Shown here in pieces: positions 3,826 through 60,450 of a DNA stretch of 64,000 nt. Position 1 is the first letter of the stretch. Each line of letters begins with the position of its first letter. The DNA is from Octopus sinensis (lineage: Eukaryota). Location of the stretch: positions 26,970,001 through 27,034,000 of the forward strand of contig NC_043020.1 in assembly GCF_006345805.1 (NCBI RefSeq), given 5' to 3'. The notes beneath the pieces were generated by a model. That model was not told where the DNA came from and searched no databases. It saw only the letters and a list, made by a program, of their open reading frames with translations. The position numbers were made by a program, and so were the translations under genes.

Positions 3826-4003
3826 AGTATATATATGCATATATATATATATATATATATAGTATATATATATATCATATATATATATATATATATCTAT
3901 ATATATATATAATCATATATATATATATAATATATTATATAGATATATATATAATATATATATATTATATAATCATATAATCATATATATATATATATCA
4001 TAC

Positions 4004-4034
<31 letters not shown>

Positions 4035-4157
4035 TAGATATATATATACATACATAATATATATATATATATATATCATATATAATATATATATATATAT
4101 ATAATCATATATATATATAGATATACATACAGTATATCATCTCTCTCTCTCTCTATC

Positions 4158-4189
<32 letters not shown>

Positions 4190-4363
4190 TTTATAATGAT
4201 ATATATTATATATATTATATACATTATATATTTACGTATAACTATTTATATTATATATATATTACATATATATATATTATATATTACATATATAATATAT
4301 ATATTTATCTATATTATATATAGATATATTATATATTATTATATATCGAGATATATATATATT

Positions 4364-4415
<52 letters not shown>

Positions 4416-4721
4416 ATATAGATTATATTATGCATATTATATATTTAACATATATTATATATACTTATATATATATATTATATATTATATATTTATGTAT
4501 ATATCATATATATTTATTATGTATATTATATATATATTATATTATATATTTTTATATATATCATATATTTATATATATATATATAAATTATTACATATTT
4601 ATATACAATATATTTATATATATATTTATATATATATTATATATGTATATACATTTATTTGTATTATATATGTATAATATATAAAAATATAAATATATAT
4701 ATCTATATCTATATATATATA

Positions 4722-4750
<29 letters not shown>
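3826..4750. repeat. About 0.9-kb almost pure A/T, degenerate (TA)n tract
   Basis: Nearly uninterrupted TA/TTA/ATA units with rare C/G. Confidence 0.97.
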
Positions 4751-4753
<3 letters not shown>

Positions 4754-4769
4754 TATATTTTTAGAACTA

Positions 4770-4930
4770 TATTCCATCCATATTCTATCGGTTACCTATG
4801 TCGAACTGCTAGGTGTCGGGGACGTAAACACACCAATACCGATTGTTGGGCTGTCGTGGGCTACAACAAATACACACACACGTACACAGCTATATACGTG
4901 ACGGGCTTCTTTCAGTTTCCGTCTACACAC
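4770..4930 (-). mobile_element. SINE family A, central part
   Basis: tattctatcggttacctatgtcgaactgctaggtgtcggggacgtaaacacacc...gacgggcttctttcagtttccgtctac. Confidence 0.85.
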
Positions 4931-4966
<36 letters not shown>

Positions 4967-5029
4967 CATATATATATATGCATGTGTATAGGCACATACG
5001 CTCATACACACACATACGTCTCTTCGCAA

Positions 5030-15250: not shown

Positions 15251-15594
15251 TTTAGCGGCATTTCGCCTGCTGTTACGTTGTGAGTTCAAATTCCGCAGAG
15301 GTCGACTTTGCCTTTCATCCTTTCGGGGGTCGATAAATTAAGTTCCAGTTACGCACTGGGGTCGATGTAATCGACTTAATCCCTTTGTCTGTCATGTTTA
15401 GCCCTTTGTGGGTAGTAAAGAAATAGGTATTTCGCCTGTCTTTACGTTCTGAGTTCAAATTCCGCTTTTCAACCCTCCCGGGTCGATAAATTAAGGTACC
15501 TGTTGCGTACTGGGGTTGATCTTATCGATTGCTTCCCCCCCCCATCAAATTTCGGGTCTTGTGCATAAAGTAGAAAAGAATATTTTTTTGACTC
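15251..15594 (+). mobile_element. Internally duplicated (dimeric) SINE family B
   Basis: Two gagttcaaattccgc...gggtcgataaattaag...ctggggt(c/t)gat units separated by a linker ending gtagtaaagaaatagg; same architecture at 60056-60450. Confidence 0.9.
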
Positions 15595-23030: not shown

Positions 23031-24799
23031 TTTTCACCAGTCTTTGCAGTTGTAAGTCGGAGCATGTGTGTGTGTATGTGTGTGCGAAGAGTGAGAGAGA
23101 AAGAGTGTGTAAGAGAAAGAGAGAGGGGGAGAAAAGAATTTGCTGGTACTGTGTACTACTATAGCTAAGAAAAGAGTACTCAATACCTTTGTAGAGTAAG
23201 CAGGTTTTGGGGGAAATTTTGAAGCAAGGGCCAACGCATCATAGTGACCGAAGGTTTCATCCTTAAATAGGGATCTTCAGAGAAGGCAATGATATGTATG
23301 CACATGCCAATAGTCCGACTGATGCTAGAATGGAACATGGACGTTACATGGTTATGATATGGTGATCACACACACACACACGCTCAAATATATACATGTG
23401 TGAGTGTATGTATATACATATAAATACACACATACACAGACATACACATAGCCATACAGTTATCTATGCTTGTATGTATATACGTGTGTATATATATAGG
23501 TATAAATGATGGTGATGAGGAATTTGTAAGAAATGGGAGTTGAATATCATAATTCTTGTGTTCCTCATCATTTTTTTCTCTAAATCTTTTATACGTCTAG
23601 AATCCCTTTCTACAAGAATTGGTAGCCCTTTTCCTAGACCAGGATGTTTAAGGTCATGGAACTCTTTTGAGGGATTCGATACTTACAGGGGGCATGTCGT
23701 GTAAAGGGGCAGTTGAGGTTTTCGGAGATGAAGGGTTGACTATGTGACGAAAACAACACTGAATAAAATTTAAAAAAATTTTAGAGAAGCCATCCAGCAA
23801 AAATTGACGTTTTAACATGTCTCACCAAACGTTGTTGATGCGGTGGTGTTCATGCTGGTATTGAAGTTGATTGAGGTATCAGGATCAACCAATCGACCAA
23901 CCAACTAGCCAAGCAAGCAAGCAAGCAACCACTTCGATAAGTTTATAGAACGTGGATGAAGCTATGCGAGGGTCCCTTGCACGCATCTCGCTTTTCGCAT
24001 TTAACCCCGACCCTGTCTGATCAAGCAAGACCCATAACTGAAGCAGTCAAATGATGATCATACGGCGGGGATACTGTTTTCCCAGATTGCATTATTGCAT
24101 TATCTAAGAAAGGAGCGTATATTTTCAAATGCATCTCGCTGCTATTTCTAGCAAACTCGATCTCGTTTCATGACAACCCGTCCTCTCTAATTTTGGTTTA
24201 TCATTGTTTATCATTTATCATTTAGTTCTTGGTCGAGCAGGCTAACAAAAGGGCACATTCCAGGTGTGACCATCTCGTCTTTTTAGGGATACTCTCACAC
24301 TCACATATTTAAAGGTCTATCTCATCAAATATCTCGTTTTCTTAACTTAAAACTGGTGGATATGATTCGAAGACAGTTGCAGGATCTATTTCTAGCAGGT
24401 CGAGCAACAACGTAGAGGGCACCCCTCCTCCCTTATCGAGGCGAAACTTCCAGCTTCCACTGCATAAATTATGTAGATAAGATAGACAGTTGGGGGGGGG
24501 GTGAAGTGGGGGAGAATGTCAAGAGACAGAACCAAAACCCTAGACATTACCATTATCAGATAGCAGCAGACCATCTCCTCCTCCTCTCCTCCTCCTCCTC
24601 CTCCTCCTCCTCCTCCTCCTACTACTACTACTACTAACACAAATGCAATACATATTTTTGCTGTTTCTATAAATCCATGTATTAGGAACACACACAACAC
24701 AAAGCAATAAATATATATACATATATACACACACACACACACATACGCATTTGTGTGTGTGTGTGTGGTGTGTGTGCAAATTGCGTTTCGTACAGTTCA

Positions 24800-27700
24800 T
24801 GTGTATCACGCTACCAGCGTGTCTGACTCATTACAAGGGTCTCTATGACACTAACATAGATTACACATTCAATGTAACACGCTACAGTAGTCTCCGCGAA
24901 ACACTAGTATACAGTCAATGGGAGACTTAAACTAACTAGTACAGACTGTGTGTCACATTCTGTATGGTTACAGCAGTATTTGACAACTGCTATTCATTCG
25001 TGACGCAACAAGCTGTGACACACCATAGCAGTGTGAAATAGAAGACGGCAGGTTATGACACACGATAGTCTAAATGTTACACTTACAACCTGTGACTGCT
25101 ACATTTTGTAATCTACTACTATAACGACACGTTTGTAGTGTATCATACAGACTAGATATGTCACGAACTGATGGAGTGTTACAGACTGAGATTGCTTTAC
25201 CAAGACCCTAGTTGTGCTATGTTGACTGTAGTAGTGTGTCGCAGTGTCTTGTAATGTCACAACCTGTAGTGTCACAGACTGCAGCGCTGTATCACATGCA
25301 CTGTAGTAGTGTTACATTCTGGCAGCGTTACAAAGACTATAGTTGTGCCAATTAGACTAGTAGTGTGTCACAGATTTCAACGGTTGTAGTACGTTACTGT
25401 TGCTGTATGTCACAGCTTGTATTGTCACATACTCTGGCAGTTTGTCACATAGAGTATAGAAGTGTCAGGGAGTGTAGTAGCGTTACAAAGACTGTGCATG
25501 TGCTACATAGACTGTCGTATGTTGCAGTTTGTAATAATGTTACAAACTCCAGCATTGTGTCCCATATATAGTGGTAGAATCAGAAACAGTGATAGTGATA
25601 AAAGATTGGTAGTATGTCACAGCTTCTAATGTAGCAGATTCCATTAGTATGTCACATAAACTGTAGTCGCATCTCAGGATGTGGCAGTGTTATGTAGTCT
25701 GTAGTTGTGTGTTACAGCCTGTTGTAACATCACAGACTCTTGCAATGTTTCATATGAGTTATAGTAGTGACACACTATGGGAGCATTAAAAAGACTGTAG
25801 TTATGTGGAGTGTTTGTCACACTATGGTAATGCAGACCCCAGCAGTGTATCACAGATATAGGTATTCCATATGAAATTTAGTGGTTTGTCAGATTTGTAT
25901 GACACTAGTACACACTCCTTAGTACAGTTAGTGTGATACACTCTGAAAACATGACACAACTAGTTTGTGACACCCTAGTTGATTCTGTGTGACACACGAC
26001 TATTTTATATGTCACGCTTCATCGTGTGTTATATACACTGGAAGAGTTTGTCATTTTACTACTGTCTGTTATATTCTACAGCAATATACGTAGCATAACA
26101 GAGTTTCTGACACACGTACTGTTTTATGTGACAAAAATACAAGCTTTTGTGACATTGCTATAGACTGAAATACTATTACACTTACTGCTACAGTCTGCAC
26201 CACGTTTCCACAGTCTATTTGACACACATGTGTATCACAGACTGTGCTCTATGTGACATACTGCTGAAGTCCAAGGTGCATTTGACTGAGTATCATTCTA
26301 TGTGATACATTACAATTTGTGACATTCTGTTCTGTGACACATCACTACAAGACTATGTGAAATAATACTATGGTCTGTAACTCACTATCAGTCAATGAGA
26401 GGACACTACAATGCTCCATGCTCTTGTTACTCTCTATATATGACACATAAATAGCTAGATTCTATGTAGCACATATTTATATTTACTGCTATAGTGTGAC
26501 ATTGCAAAACTATAGTGTGGACTGATTACAGAATATGGCACACTGCCCCAATCTGCAGCTATTAAATTTCTATGAGGCACTATTATATAGTCTGTGACAC
26601 AGATACACATACAGTATGTATTTAAAATAGTATTGTAACACAACTACAGGTAATGAGCTAGAATGTAGTATCAAGGTACAAAGGTTGTACAAATATGTAA
26701 CATGGACAAGTAGTGTGTCATAAAGGTTGTAGAACTGTGTCACAGGTTTTGGCACATGTATTAATTACATTACTAATAATGGTGTGGTATATAGGTAGAA
26801 ATAGTGTCTTGCTATCATATAGTATCCAGGTAGTTGTATACACTGTATATATAGTAACATATTATTGTAGTGTAGCACGGTATGTCACATGAAATATGGA
26901 TGTATCACTACTGAAATTCGTGTAAACACTACAGCATAGTATGAAAGATATTTCTAAAGTCTCTGATGTCACAATACAACTTGTAACTATAGTCTGTGAC
27001 ACAGACTATAGAATTGCACATGTCAATACTACAATGAATGTGACTCACTGTAGATGGCACGTGATACACCACAATAGTCTCAGTGTAACATTACAGTAGT
27101 CTGTGTTTTATGTAACTGTAGTCTGTGTGACACAACTACAGCCAATATGGTACACTACCACCATTGCATGTGCAGAATTATTTCAGCCGATGTAACGTTC
27201 TACAACAGTCTGATATACGTTTAGTCTGTGACAGTGCATTGGACTGTTACTGCTAACATTTATGACACTGTCACAAATTGTGTAACACTGCATCTCTTAT
27301 GCCATTCTCACAATCTCCTTGATACACTACTATAATCTGTCATACTACACTTGTCTGTTAGTCCTGAAGCGTGCCACTTAGACTATAATACTATGTTACT
27401 ACAGACTATAATACTATGTTACTTACCAAGGCTTGTGACACTGGTACAAACTATATAGCACTATGATGGTCACTGTGACTTACAATCTACGATTACTCGT
27501 CTAATTGACACAGTACTATAATCTGTGTCACTGCTAACGTTTGTGTCTCTGCTACAGACTGTAACACAACAATAGCCATTGTAACTTACAGACTAAGTAA
27601 TTGTTACAGTCTGTGTGACAGGCCACTACCTTGTATGACACAAGATGTGACAAAACTTATTACACTGTTTGAAACACTTTAGCACAATGGCGTTGTTTTT

Positions 27701-28080
27701 GTAACACAAAGCCTATTTATGTATTGTACCTTGTGGTTGTTACCACAGTACGTGTAACACACTGCACTAGTTTTATATGTTACATTACAAAAATTTAAAT
27801 CCCTAATACTCAAATTTTTTGTGATTAGAATAGTTTATAAAATACACTAACTCATGCTATGTAACTGTTATGGTAACCCACTCCACTACTGGTGTCAATG
27901 CCTGACTATTACAATCGCTCGTTTACTATGTTACTACTGTACTGTATATGTTGCTATTAAAGTCTGTGACAATACAATAAGCTATACAGGCACTGCTACT
28001 ACCTATCTGTCTGAGACTGCCATCTATGTAACAAAGTGATAAAGTCTATGTGACCAAACTACTGCCTTTGTGACAGTAGT
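24800..28080. repeat. Highly degenerate array of about 15-20-nt units, consensus near GTGTCACAGACTGTAGTA, in orientation-switching blocks
   Basis: Dozens of gtgtcac/gtgttac/gtatcac and tgtgacac/tatgacac cores linked by actgtagt/actacagt-like segments, e.g. ctgtagtgtcacagactgcag (about 25265) and actgtagtctgtgtgacacaactacag (about 27114). Confidence 0.8.
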
Positions 28081-28639
28081 TCCACATTTTGCTAATTTCA
28101 AGATCTTTATTTTTGCTCAGTTTTTGGTAGGTCTTGACAGATACGTTTATATCGATTGAGACAGTCATATCAATGAGGAGGCATGATTGTAGGCTTTGAA
28201 GGGGTCAGTTGGGGAGTCAGGTGCCAATTTGAGCTTCCCTTCGTTGTTCAGGTGACCAGGATATATGGAGTTCCTCGGTTGTGCCTCAGAGGAACTCGTT
28301 TTTTTTTTTGGTGGTGGTGGTGGTGGATCCTTTAAATTTATTTTATGCACGAAATTGTCCCAAACTCCATTTAACCCTTGTGTTGTAGTGCCCCCTGTCT
28401 ATTTTGTGTTTGGTCCTTGTGACCTAAAGAAACATTATTACTATTATTGAACAGTAGGGTCGATGTAATCGACTCATCCCTTCTCTCAAATTGCTGTCCT
28501 TATAGAAAAATTTGAAACCATTATTATTATTATATTATTATTATTATTATTATTATATTATTATTATTATTATTATTTTTATCATTATTATTGTTATCAT
28601 TATTATTGTTATCATTATTATTGCTGTTGTTATTATTAT

Positions 28640-29560
28640 ACTTGTTTATGTACACTACTGCTCATAATGGTTATATTATATATTTATGAAGTCTCATTAA
28701 CTATGTAAGGGGCGTTTACAATAATCTACGAGACATATTTTGCTACAGCAGCTTATACATCTTCTATAAGCTTTGTGACACACTATAGAAACCTATGTGT
28801 CTATTACAGGCTCTGCGTATGTGATACTCAAATTTATGTGGCTTATAAGCTTGTCTACGTAACAAAATGCTACAGTGTACATGAACGAAGGATATCACTG
28901 GAGTTTGCGACTACTAACTCTACGCGACACACTGCAAACTCCATGCGTGGCACATTGTTACTATGTGCGACACTTAGAGTCACACTAGCCAGTGTGACTC
29001 TAAATGAGTACAGACTCTGTCACATCGGGAATCGGTCTACGTGGCTTAAAACTGACGCTACGTTACGCAACGATCAATGTGACTCTAAAAAAAAAAACAG
29101 ACTCCGACTCGCTACGAAGGTCTATGTGACACACAAATACTCTGTGACAGTATGTTACACACCGGCCAATATGACTCTACATATGCACAGACAGTGACAC
29201 AATGCCACGACCTATGTGACAGTAATACAGTTCTCTGTCACTCACTGCACACAAACCTTAGAATTTGCAATCTATGTCGCAGCCGCTAGTATATTACGCA
29301 ATACAACTAATTCTATAGGCGGAATACAATCCAGTCTACGTGGATCACTGCCAAACCCTTTGTGACATCTGAGATCTCTGTGACACTGTTAGAATCGATG
29401 TGAACAAGTACAGCTTAAATATTGCTATCGTGTAATCTGTACCATTATACATTACATAACATTCCATCTGACATGAGAACGTCGGAGATGCATTACGAAG
29501 CCTTACACAACAGCCTCAGTTCGGCTACTATAACCCACGTATATACGTATATACTGCAAC
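28640..29560. repeat. Continuation of the degenerate TGTGACAC array after an insertion block
   Basis: ctttgtgacacactatag, ctatgtgacacacaaatactctgtgacag, ctctgtgacactgttag and similar; separated from the first part by SINE-B and (ATT)n sequence at 28.1-28.6 kb. Confidence 0.75.
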
Positions 29561-29573
29561 AGTTTACAGTGTG

Positions 29574-29623
<50 letters not shown>

Positions 29624-60055: not shown

Positions 60056-60450
60056 CTTTTCTACTCTAGGCACAAGGCTCGAAATTTTGGGGAAAGGGGC
60101 CAGTCGGTTACATCGACCCCAACATGCAACTAGTACTTAGTTTATCGACCCCGAAAGGATGAAAGGCAAAGTCGACCTCGGCGGATTTTGAACTCAGAAC
60201 GTAACGACAGACGATATACCTATTTCTTTAGTACCCAGAAGGGGCTAAACAGAGGGGACAAACAAGGACAGAAAAACGGATTAAGTCGATTACATCGACC
60301 CAAGTGCGTAACTGGTAAATTATTTAATCGACCCCGAAAGGATGAAAGGCAGAGTCGACCTCGGCGGAATTTGAACTCAGAACGTTACGACAGACAAAAT
60401 ACCGCTAAGTATTTCGTCCGTGGTGCTAACGTTTCTGCCATCTCGCCGCC
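60056..60450 (-). mobile_element. Full-length dimeric SINE family B
   Basis: Minus strand starts ggcggcgagatggcagaaacgttagcaccacgg (A box); two gagttcaaa(a/t)tccgccgaggtcgact(c/t)tgcctttcatcctttcggggtcgat units. Confidence 0.93.

What the first reader, a model, noticed from the sequence alone, without database searches (positions are those of the whole stretch)
24800..29560. 4.7-kb scrambled array of an ~18-nt quasi-palindromic unit with block-wise orientation switches
Seen: the region consists almost entirely of degenerate copies of a unit near GTGTCACAGACTGTAGTA, 15-20 nt and of variable length. Approximate orientations are TGTGACAC-type at 24.8-25.13 kb, GTGTCAC-type at 25.13-25.88 kb, TGTGACAC-type at 25.89-26.46 kb, mixed at 26.46-26.96 kb, then TGTGACAC-type. 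For about 3.3 kb (24800-28080) I see no SINE and no long microsatellite, whereas the rest of the window has one every few hundred bp. Units are very diverged from each other yet the block is little invaded. Inference: this is either a constrained element, or sequence made in one error-prone burst by iterative short-template, template-switching synthesis (RT slippage or Pol-theta-like repair), or the internal region of an unrecognised mobile element. The core carries TGACA/TGTCA, the established TALE-homeodomain (Meis/Pknox/TGIF) site, so a dense binding array is also possible.
Basis: partly seen in the sequence, partly recalled or inferred. Interest (0 to 1): 0.72.

Follow-up and report, generated by a model that had tools for sequence, protein, structure and literature searches.

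The report
Decayed satellite array with inverted blocks
This is a real but very old and worn-down stretch of tandemly repeated non-coding DNA whose left half has the geometry of an ancient fold-back, and nothing found here points to a function.

Summary
About 4.0 kb of window 24803-29412 is made of degenerate copies of a ~20-nt quasi-palindromic unit, consensus AGTGTGTCACAGACTGTAGT. A 0.56-kb foreign insert at 28079-28639 splits it.

The unit orientation runs in five blocks: - + - + -.

Three things are new.
1. The 20-mers are sub-repeats of a ~120-150-nt monomer. This is clear in block B (five copies, 56-70% identical). A profile built from B alone hits only this array in the 64 kb.
2. The four leftmost blocks are mirror-symmetric about 25870.5 (305|733 || 716|277 nt; P about 0.001, post hoc). 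The two arms show no mirror sequence similarity.
3. The array core has lost CpG specifically (o/e 0.29 against GpC 0.83; window median 0.88). This fits the satellite methylation reported for octopus.

My best reading is an ancient satellite relic that grew stepwise and was rearranged by fold-back or inversion events at its palindromic units.

- A single error-prone burst is not supported.
- The TALE-site reading is weak: only 9 of 63 TGACA are TGACAG.
- A Foldback-type transposon relic is not excluded, but no terminal repeats or arm similarity were found.

No genome-wide or cross-species comparison was possible with these tools. Interest is low.

The parts
24803..25120 (-). Block A: about 3 monomers, units in '-' orientation (the + strand reads ACTACAGTCTGTGACACACT-like). 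Outer left domain of the mirror-symmetric module. CpG o/e 0.73.
   Evidence: PWM units; nhmmer hits 24803-24893, 24896-25020, 25055-25150 on '-'; CpG
25127..25859 (+). Block B: five to six copies of a 133-155-nt higher-order repeat, each of about 7 sub-units of ~20 nt. This is the best preserved part, with copies 56-70% identical.
   Evidence: Self-BLAST offsets 133/153/207/455; alignment A1; nhmmer E 1e-23 to 1e-36; divergence
25864..25877 (.). Centre of symmetry: 14-nt near-palindrome ATTCCATATGAAAT (12 of 14 positions), midpoint 25870.5, at the B/C orientation switch.
   Evidence: Read from the sequence; symmetry of the switch points about this position
25887..26606 (-). Block C: about 5 monomers in '-' orientation, more decayed than B. 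Its length mirrors block B (716 against 733 nt).
   Evidence: PWM; nhmmer with the B-only model, best hit 26325-26187, E 2.4e-7; tiling
26632..26908 (+). Block D: weak, AT-rich '+' block of 2-3 partial monomers. Its length mirrors block A (277 against 305 nt).
   Evidence: PWM hits 26632, 26714, 26734, 26869 on '+'; nhmmer '+' hits E 0.002-0.005
26933..28078 (-). Block E: about 9 monomers in '-' orientation.
   Evidence: PWM; nhmmer
27380..27423 (.). Perfect 23-nt duplication (1.9 copies, 100% match) inside block E. It marks a recent slippage event.
   Evidence: Tandem Repeats Finder
28079..28639 (.). Foreign insert that splits the array: unique sequence, a SINE-core fragment at 28458 and an (ATT)n microsatellite at 28520-28639.
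   Evidence: No unit hits here; SINE-core match to 15359-15385; TRF
28640..29412 (-). Block F: about 5 monomers in '-' orientation. It is a CpG-retaining variant (units such as CTACGTG.., GCGACAC), CpG o/e 0.89. It contains a 36-nt hairpin palindrome at 28971-29006.
   Evidence: PWM; nhmmer; CpG; palindrome
24575..24776 (.). Left flank: compound microsatellites (CTC)n, (CTA)n, (AC)n, (TG)n that abut the start of the array.
   Evidence: TRF
29574..29623 (.). Right flank: (TA)n microsatellite, about 160 nt beyond the last monomer.
   Evidence: TRF

Best explanation
I read this as a relic of an old, non-coding satellite-type tandem array.

The primary unit is a ~20-nt quasi-palindrome. It carries TGT-C-ACA overlapping ACAG-A-CTGT, and its length varies in 2-nt steps through its GT run. 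About seven diverged units were later amplified together as a ~120-150-nt monomer. This was ordinary unequal exchange or slippage in at least two rounds (shown for block B, inferred elsewhere).

The orientation blocks are secondary rearrangements. The left 2.1 kb (24.80-26.92 kb) has the geometry of one large inverted duplication, [A- B+ | C- D+], centred at 25870.5. It was most likely made by fold-back or template switching at the unit's own short palindromes, or by inversion between oppositely oriented units (inferred). The rest of the array (26.93-29.41 kb) keeps the original orientation.

The array has since decayed neutrally, to about 50% identity between units. It lost CpGs through methylation-driven deamination, as expected if it was methylated like other octopus satellites (inferred). 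It also took one transposon and microsatellite insertion. I see no evidence that it does anything.
For: - The array and its periodicity are real and confined to this locus.
- Higher-order repeat in B: offsets of 133-153 nt, five copies, 56-70% identical, transitions/transversions 1.0.
- The B-only profile finds near-full-length matches on the expected strand in every other block. An iterated profile tiles about 30 monomers.
- Orientation is block-wise (runs z = -5.4). The switch points mirror each other within -3 and +27 nt, with simulated P about 0.001.
- CpG o/e is 0.29 in the core, while GpC, equally absent from the consensus, has recovered to 0.83. The three lowest of 86 CpG bins in the window all lie inside the array. 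Uniform decay of a CpG-free unit would give 0.7-0.8.
- In O. bimaculoides, intergenic DNA and transposons are essentially unmethylated, but satellites carry relatively more methylation (PMC9476566).
- No real ORFs and no Rfam family. Hairpin potential is not above the rest of the window.
Against: - No mirror-register sequence similarity exists between the putative palindrome arms. If C were copied from B after the higher-order repeat arose, B/C partners should be at least as similar as the B copies are to each other. They are not, so the palindrome rests on geometry alone, noticed post hoc.
- The monomer phase outside block B is not independently proven.
- Conservation along the unit is uneven: information sd 0.35 against 0.14-0.18 in simulated uniform decay. 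That could mean constraint on the TGTnWCAnA core rather than neutrality.
- The 2.6-3.5-kb microsatellite-free stretch is the longest in the window, and this model does not explain it.
- Copy number in the genome and conservation across species are unknown.
I did not verify it.
Confidence: 0.6

Rival explanations
1. The array is a remnant of one or more Foldback-type non-autonomous DNA transposons of the FB/Galileo/Tetris kind. In these elements, long inverted arms are built from short tandem sub-repeats that serve as extra transposase-binding sites. Here 24.80-26.92 kb would be one element with ~1.05-kb arms and almost no middle domain, and 26.93-29.41 kb would be a further partial arm.
For: - Two ~1.05-kb arms lie in inverted orientation and consist of short sub-repeats, with mirror-symmetric internal domain boundaries.
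- The unit has a better-conserved core, as expected for a protein-binding sub-repeat.
- Foldback elements with internally repetitive arms that seed satellite arrays are documented: Tetris (PMC4079207) and Galileo (PMC3573991).
Against: - Arm-to-arm sequence similarity is not above the array background.
- No similar termini exist at 24.78-24.90 against 26.85-27.00 kb or at the ends of the whole array.
- Target-site duplications cannot be read, because a microsatellite lies on one side and array on the other.
- There is no second copy in 64 kb.
- Each arm contains two sub-domains of opposite unit orientation, which is not the usual FB layout.
- The model leaves 2.4 kb of same-family array unexplained.
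Confidence: 0.2
2. The array is a constrained protein-binding array: a dense cluster of sites for a TALE-homeodomain factor or another factor that recognises TGTSACA. It would act as a regulatory or chromatin-organising element, and selection would keep insertions out.
For: - Core positions are conserved well above the linker positions.
- TGACA occurs at 15.5 per kb against 1.65 per kb outside.
- The array holds the longest insertion-free stretch in the window.
Against: - Only 9 of 63 TGACA are the MEIS/PKNOX hexamer TGACAG; the dominant form is TGACAC.
- The enrichment is an automatic consequence of the repeated unit.
- The uneven conservation is equally explained by pre-existing sub-unit differences within the monomer and by 2-nt length slippage.
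- CpG decay and ~50% identity between units look neutral.
- No expression, accessibility or orthology data were available.
Confidence: 0.07
3. The sequence was made in a single burst of iterative, error-prone short-template synthesis (reverse-transcriptase slippage or Pol-theta-like repair). The unit diversity would then be original rather than the result of age.
For: - Unit identity does not fall with distance: 0.50 at under 30 nt against 0.50-0.53 at larger distances.
- The quasi-palindromic unit is a good substrate for template switching.
- There are few later insertions.
Against: - The higher-order repeat of about seven distinct sub-units, repeated five times in block B, needs a second amplification step after the sub-units diverged.
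- CpG-specific loss alongside GpC recovery indicates long mutational exposure.
- The flat identity profile is what a higher-order repeat or saturation predicts.
- A recent perfect duplication shows ordinary slippage at work.
Confidence: 0.05

Closest known systems
Satellite DNA with sub-repeat / higher-order-repeat structure, including strand-switch points inside arrays
   Same: - Head-to-tail repeats.
- A short ancestral unit nested in a ~120-150-nt monomer.
- Local re-amplification (block B).
- Block-wise orientation changes.
- Flanking and internal microsatellites.
- Non-coding.
- A CpG-decay footprint that fits the satellite methylation reported in octopus (PMC9476566).
   Different: - It is only about 4 kb and extremely decayed (units ~50% identical), so Tandem Repeats Finder does not detect it.
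- Genomic abundance is unknown.
- There is no homogenisation between neighbouring units.
Foldback-type transposons (Drosophila FB, Galileo, Tetris)
   Same: - Long inverted arms made of short tandem sub-repeats.
- Little or no middle domain.
- No coding capacity.
- Such elements are known to seed satellite arrays (PMC4079207, PMC3573991).
   Different: - No arm-to-arm similarity.
- No conserved termini.
- No readable target-site duplication.
- No other copy in the window.
- Each arm holds two domains of opposite unit orientation.
- The same repeat continues for 2.4 kb beyond the symmetric module.
Palindromic (fold-back) duplications started at short inverted repeats. The mechanism (hairpin-primed or template-switch repair) is from my own knowledge and was not checked in a paper here.
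   Same: - Mirror-symmetric domain boundaries about a short near-palindrome.
- The repeat unit itself supplies abundant short inverted repeats.
   Different: - Known young palindromes have near-identical arms; here the arms are no more alike than any two pieces of the array.
- The event, if real, is very old or has been overwritten by later amplification in block B.
Vertebrate-type minisatellites (10-60-nt units)
   Same: The unit length is about 20 nt, with length-variable units and slippage events.
   Different: - It is not GC-rich.
- It is highly degenerate.
- It is organised into a longer monomer.
- It contains inverted blocks.

Membership tests
Satellite / minisatellite tandem array | Head-to-tail copies of a definable unit, above chance | tested here: met
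   Lag-20 autocorrelation z = 6.2. 81 units of at least 10 bits against 24 in shuffles and 13 in the other 58 kb. Modal step 20 nt.
Satellite / minisatellite tandem array | Higher-order or monomer periodicity | tested here: met
   Block B has five copies at offsets of 133-155 nt, 56-70% identical. Elsewhere it is only suggested.
Satellite / minisatellite tandem array | Family present as arrays elsewhere in the genome, or catalogued in a repeat library | not testable with these tools
   No cephalopod genome or repeat library was reachable. No other copy in the 64-kb window. Literature searches found no described octopus satellite of this kind.
Foldback-type transposon | Two long arms in inverted orientation built of short tandem sub-repeats | tested here: met
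   A+B (24803-25859) against C+D (25887-26908). Switch points are symmetric within -3 and +27 nt, P about 0.001.
Foldback-type transposon | The arms are reverse complements of each other (sequence similarity in mirror register) | tested here: not met
   Junction-arm alignments are no better than the array background. B copies do not prefer their mirror partners. No antidiagonal k-mer peak remains after normalisation. The fold z-score is only -2.9.
Foldback-type transposon | Conserved terminal sequences and target-site duplication | tested here: not met
   The module's ends align at score 16 against a null mean of 21. The whole-array ends align at 24 against a null maximum of 25. Target-site duplications cannot be read, because a microsatellite and array flank the module.
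Foldback-type transposon | Multiple dispersed copies | not testable with these tools
   Only one locus in the window. No genome was available.
TALE-homeodomain (MEIS/PKNOX/TGIF) site cluster | Consensus hexamer TGACAG (or PBX-MEIS TGATTGACAG) as the recurrent site | tested here: not met
   9 of 63 TGACA are TGACAG, 31 are TGACAC, and there are no TGATTGACAG. Actual binding is not testable here.
Structured RNA / miRNA cluster | Match to a known RNA family, or excess stable hairpins | tested here: not met
   Rfam found no hits at gathering score. The 90-nt window MFE distribution resembles the rest of the window.

The most novel reading that the evidence does not exclude
The 24.80-26.92 kb module is the decayed footprint of a cephalopod Foldback-like DNA transposon family. 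The ~20-nt units would be its arrayed transposase-binding sites, and the adjacent 2.4-kb array a satellite that it seeded. The CpG-specific decay would mark the array as a rare methylation-targeted intergenic sequence in an otherwise unmethylated octopus intergenome.
Probability: 0.15. Interest if true: 0.4.

Novelty: new member of a known kind. Interest (0 to 1): 0.2.

Why it matters
The value is mostly practical. Standard tandem-repeat finders miss this array, so sequence of this kind probably sits in the "unannotated" fraction of cephalopod genomes. A monomer profile recovers it cleanly.

Two side observations could be reused:
- CpG-specific decay with GpC as an internal control could map historically methylated satellites in a genome whose intergenic DNA is largely unmethylated.
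- Symmetry of the switch points could reveal ancient fold-back events after all arm similarity has gone.

No biological function is indicated.

Tried and rejected
- **Exact look-up of the 140-aa ORF 28775-29197.** I hoped to find other assemblies of the locus. Nothing is on record.
- **Homology search with the same ORF.** It returned no hits, not even to itself. This collection therefore offers no protein-based route to orthologous DNA.
- **Metagenome scan for two adjacent unit cores** (GTCACAGACTN{6,14}GTCACAGACT). It returned more than 120 loci. On inspection they are unrelated short minisatellites that merely share the 10-mer. This gives no evidence of homology.
- **Rfam.** No hits.
- **Terminal inverted repeats.** Not above chance, either at the array ends or at the ends of the symmetric module.
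- **Mirror-register similarity between arms,** tested three ways. None was found.
- **Foldback potential as single-stranded DNA.** Weak, z = -2.9.
- **Hairpin or miRNA-like excess.** None.
- **Re-running the motif EM on other parts of the window as a control.** The model drifted onto microsatellites, so the control is uninformative. I relied on the fixed-matrix scan and the B-only profile instead.
- **Fixed-lag gapped autocorrelation** to prove the monomer period outside block B. The result was too fuzzy to decide.
- **Pfam scan of six-frame flank translations.** By eye they are low-complexity, and no ORF in the window exceeds 243 aa.
- **Literature searches** for a described octopus satellite or minisatellite, and for the SINE core string. 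Nothing relevant turned up.
Full report
**1. Is the array there?**

Yes. The region is saturated with a motif family that is almost absent from the rest of the window.
- TGTGACA occurs 24 times inside and 2 times outside; TGTCACA occurs 15 against 4.
- A 20-nt weight matrix refined on the region converges on AGTGTGTCACAGACTGTAGT.
- That matrix scores 81 non-overlapping hits of at least 10 bits between 24 and 30 kb, against 13 in the other 58 kb. Shuffles of the region yield 24 on average.
- Base autocorrelation peaks at lag 20 (z = 6.2), with 18 and 22 also raised.
- Steps between successive called units are mostly 20, 18 or 22 nt. The 2-nt quantisation fits slippage in the unit's GT run.
- Tandem Repeats Finder reports nothing except one perfect 23-nt duplication at 27380-27423. 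This shows how degenerate the array is: called units are about 50% identical to each other and 62-69% identical to the consensus.

The array runs from 24803 to 29412. A 0.56-kb insert at 28079-28639 interrupts it. The insert lacks units and carries a SINE-core fragment and an (ATT)n tract.

**2. Orientation blocks**

The weight matrix and a profile built only from block B give the same picture:
- '-' 24803-25120 (A)
- '+' 25127-25859 (B)
- '-' 25887-26606 (C)
- weak '+' 26632-26908 (D)
- '-' 26933-28078 (E)
- '-' 28640-29412 (F)

Among 92 confident units there are 19 orientation runs against 42 expected (z = -5.4).

**3.

- Self-BLAST shows direct similarity within block B at offsets of 133, 153, 207 and 455 nt.
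- Five consecutive segments of 133-155 nt align with 56-70% identity, and each contains about seven distinguishable ~20-nt sub-units.
- An nhmmer profile of these five copies, searched against the whole 64 kb on both strands, hits only inside the array. Each hit falls on the strand that the unit orientation predicts. The best hit outside B has E = 2.4e-7.
- Iterating the profile tiles the array with about 30 near-full-length monomers of roughly 100-150 nt.

The monomer is secure in block B. Elsewhere it is likely, but its phase is not independently proven, because a profile made of similar sub-units can align in several registers and my lag tests were inconclusive.

The array therefore grew in at least two steps, which argues against a single synthetic burst. 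The mean Jukes-Cantor distance between B copies is 0.49, or about 0.25 per lineage. The calibration quoted for octopus transposon waves is 0.09 for 25 My and 0.2 for 56 My (PMC13282606). On that basis even the youngest amplification is older than about 56 My. This estimate is rough and assumes an octopod origin for the window, which I did not verify.

**4. Mirror geometry**

The switch points lie at about 25127, 25871, 26618 and 26920. Together with the left end of the array (24777-24813), they are symmetric about 25870.5, where a 14-nt near-palindrome (ATTCCATATGAAAT) sits. The block lengths are A 305 | B 733 || C 716 | D 277 nt. The deviations from perfect symmetry are -3 and +27 nt.

In simulations with four random switch points, symmetry this good arises with P of about 0.001. 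The pattern was noticed post hoc, and the switch points are uncertain by 15-45 nt.

This is the geometry of a 2.1-kb inverted duplication, or of a Foldback-type element. Sequence evidence for it is absent:
- arms next to each junction are no more alike than arbitrary array segments;
- B copies do not prefer their mirror partners;
- inverted k-mer matches show no antidiagonal peak once normalised;
- the central kilobase folds only slightly better than shuffles (z = -2.9).

If C were copied from B after the monomer was amplified, the partners should be at least as similar as the B copies are to one another. They are not. Either the symmetry is a coincidence, or block B was later homogenised. I leave this open.

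No terminal inverted repeats exist at the ends of the module or of the whole array.

**5. CpG-specific decay**

- The array core (25.13-28.08 kb) has CpG o/e 0.29, with 29 CpGs in 2950 nt.
- The three lowest of 86 CpG bins in the window all lie inside it; the window median is 0.88.
- Neither CG nor GC occurs in the consensus unit, yet GpC has recovered to 0.83 (window 0.93).
- Uniform decay of the consensus to the observed divergence predicts CpG o/e of 0.7-0.8.
- At the TG positions of the unit, T-to-C changes are rarer than T-to-A changes.

The loss is therefore specific to CpG, as methylation-driven deamination would produce.

[quoted passage not shown] Intergenic DNA and transposons are essentially unmethylated, but satellites carry relatively more methylation (PMC9476566). 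That matches a satellite-only footprint in an otherwise CpG-normal window.

The terminal blocks A (0.73) and F (0.89) are not depleted. Block F carries CpG-containing unit variants such as CTACGTG and GCGACAC. I cannot explain that difference.

**6. 'Little invaded'**

The stretch 24776-27380 is the longest in the window without a microsatellite or SINE core. It measures 2604 nt, against 1579 nt for the next longest and a median of 199 nt, and it ends only at the array's own duplication. The claim is correct for microsatellites. With my narrow SINE pattern the array has 1 core in 4.6 kb against 4 in 59 kb outside, so it is not SINE-poor. I have no tested explanation for the microsatellite deficit.

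**7. Function**

- No ORF of substance and no Rfam family.
- No excess of stable hairpins.
- TGACA is enriched ninefold, but only because it lies in the unit. Just 9 of 63 TGACA are the MEIS-type TGACAG.
- Conservation along the unit is uneven: information per position has sd 0.35, against 0.14-0.18 for simulated uniform decay, and the best-kept positions are T3 G4 T5 C8 A9 A11 T17. Three explanations are possible: constraint, differences between sub-units that predate the monomer, or length slippage. These data cannot separate them.

**8. External comparison**

None was possible. Two protein-based routes and one metagenome pattern scan gave nothing usable. The papers I could search describe no such octopus repeat. 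I therefore cannot say whether the family is already in a repeat library.

**9. Verdict**

This is a real, well-delimited but ordinary object: a decayed satellite with sub-repeat architecture, rearranged by inversion or fold-back events. It shows a methylation-type CpG footprint and no sign of function. A Foldback-type transposon relic is the main alternative, at about 0.2. Interest is low.

Noticed in passing
window 25130-28080 against 24800-25130 and 28640-29420: CpG o/e is 0.29 in the array core, while GpC is 0.83; both dinucleotides are absent from the consensus unit. The terminal blocks A (0.73) and F (0.89) are not depleted. Block F carries CpG-bearing unit variants (CTACGTG, GCGACAC) where the core has CTATGTG and GTGACAC.
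   Followed up: partly
window 24803-29412: Unit length is quantised in 2-nt steps: 18, 20 and 22 nt account for 50 of 72 short steps, while 17, 19, 21 and 23 account for 17. This fits slippage of the GT run inside the unit.
   Followed up: partly
window 28971-29006 and 26987-27011: There are two local palindromes. One is a 36-nt hairpin with a 16-bp perfect stem (TTAGAGTCACACTGGCTAGTGTGACTCTAA). The other is a 25-nt, 96% palindrome (CTATAGTCTGTGACACAGACTATAG), which is a single unit mirrored on its own core. They may be small-scale examples of the fold-back process proposed for the large blocks.
   Followed up: partly
whole window: About 19% of the window (12,077 nt in 146 merged intervals) is tandem repeat by TRF, with a median spacing of 199 nt. 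Positions 4001-5000 have only 15% G+C. SINE-core matches (GGTCGA..ATCGAC) lie at 15360, 18238, 28458 and 29966 on '+' and at 60285 on '-'.
   Followed up: no
L067 1610-2380 (metagenome contig Ga0209149_1085485): This unrelated contig carries a ~0.75-kb tandem array of a 17-nt, almost perfectly palindromic unit (ATGTCACAGTCTGTGAC). Runs of units differ only in the central base (AGTCT against AGACT), so orientation flips within a palindromic repeat. It was picked up only because it shares the 10-mer I searched for. Its origin and function are unknown.
   Followed up: no
window 24706-24736 and 29569-29599: Simple-sequence tracts flanking the array are 84-92% complementary over 26-31 nt (ATATATACACACAC / GTGTGTATATATAT). 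This is most likely a chance match between microsatellites rather than terminal repeats.
   Followed up: partly
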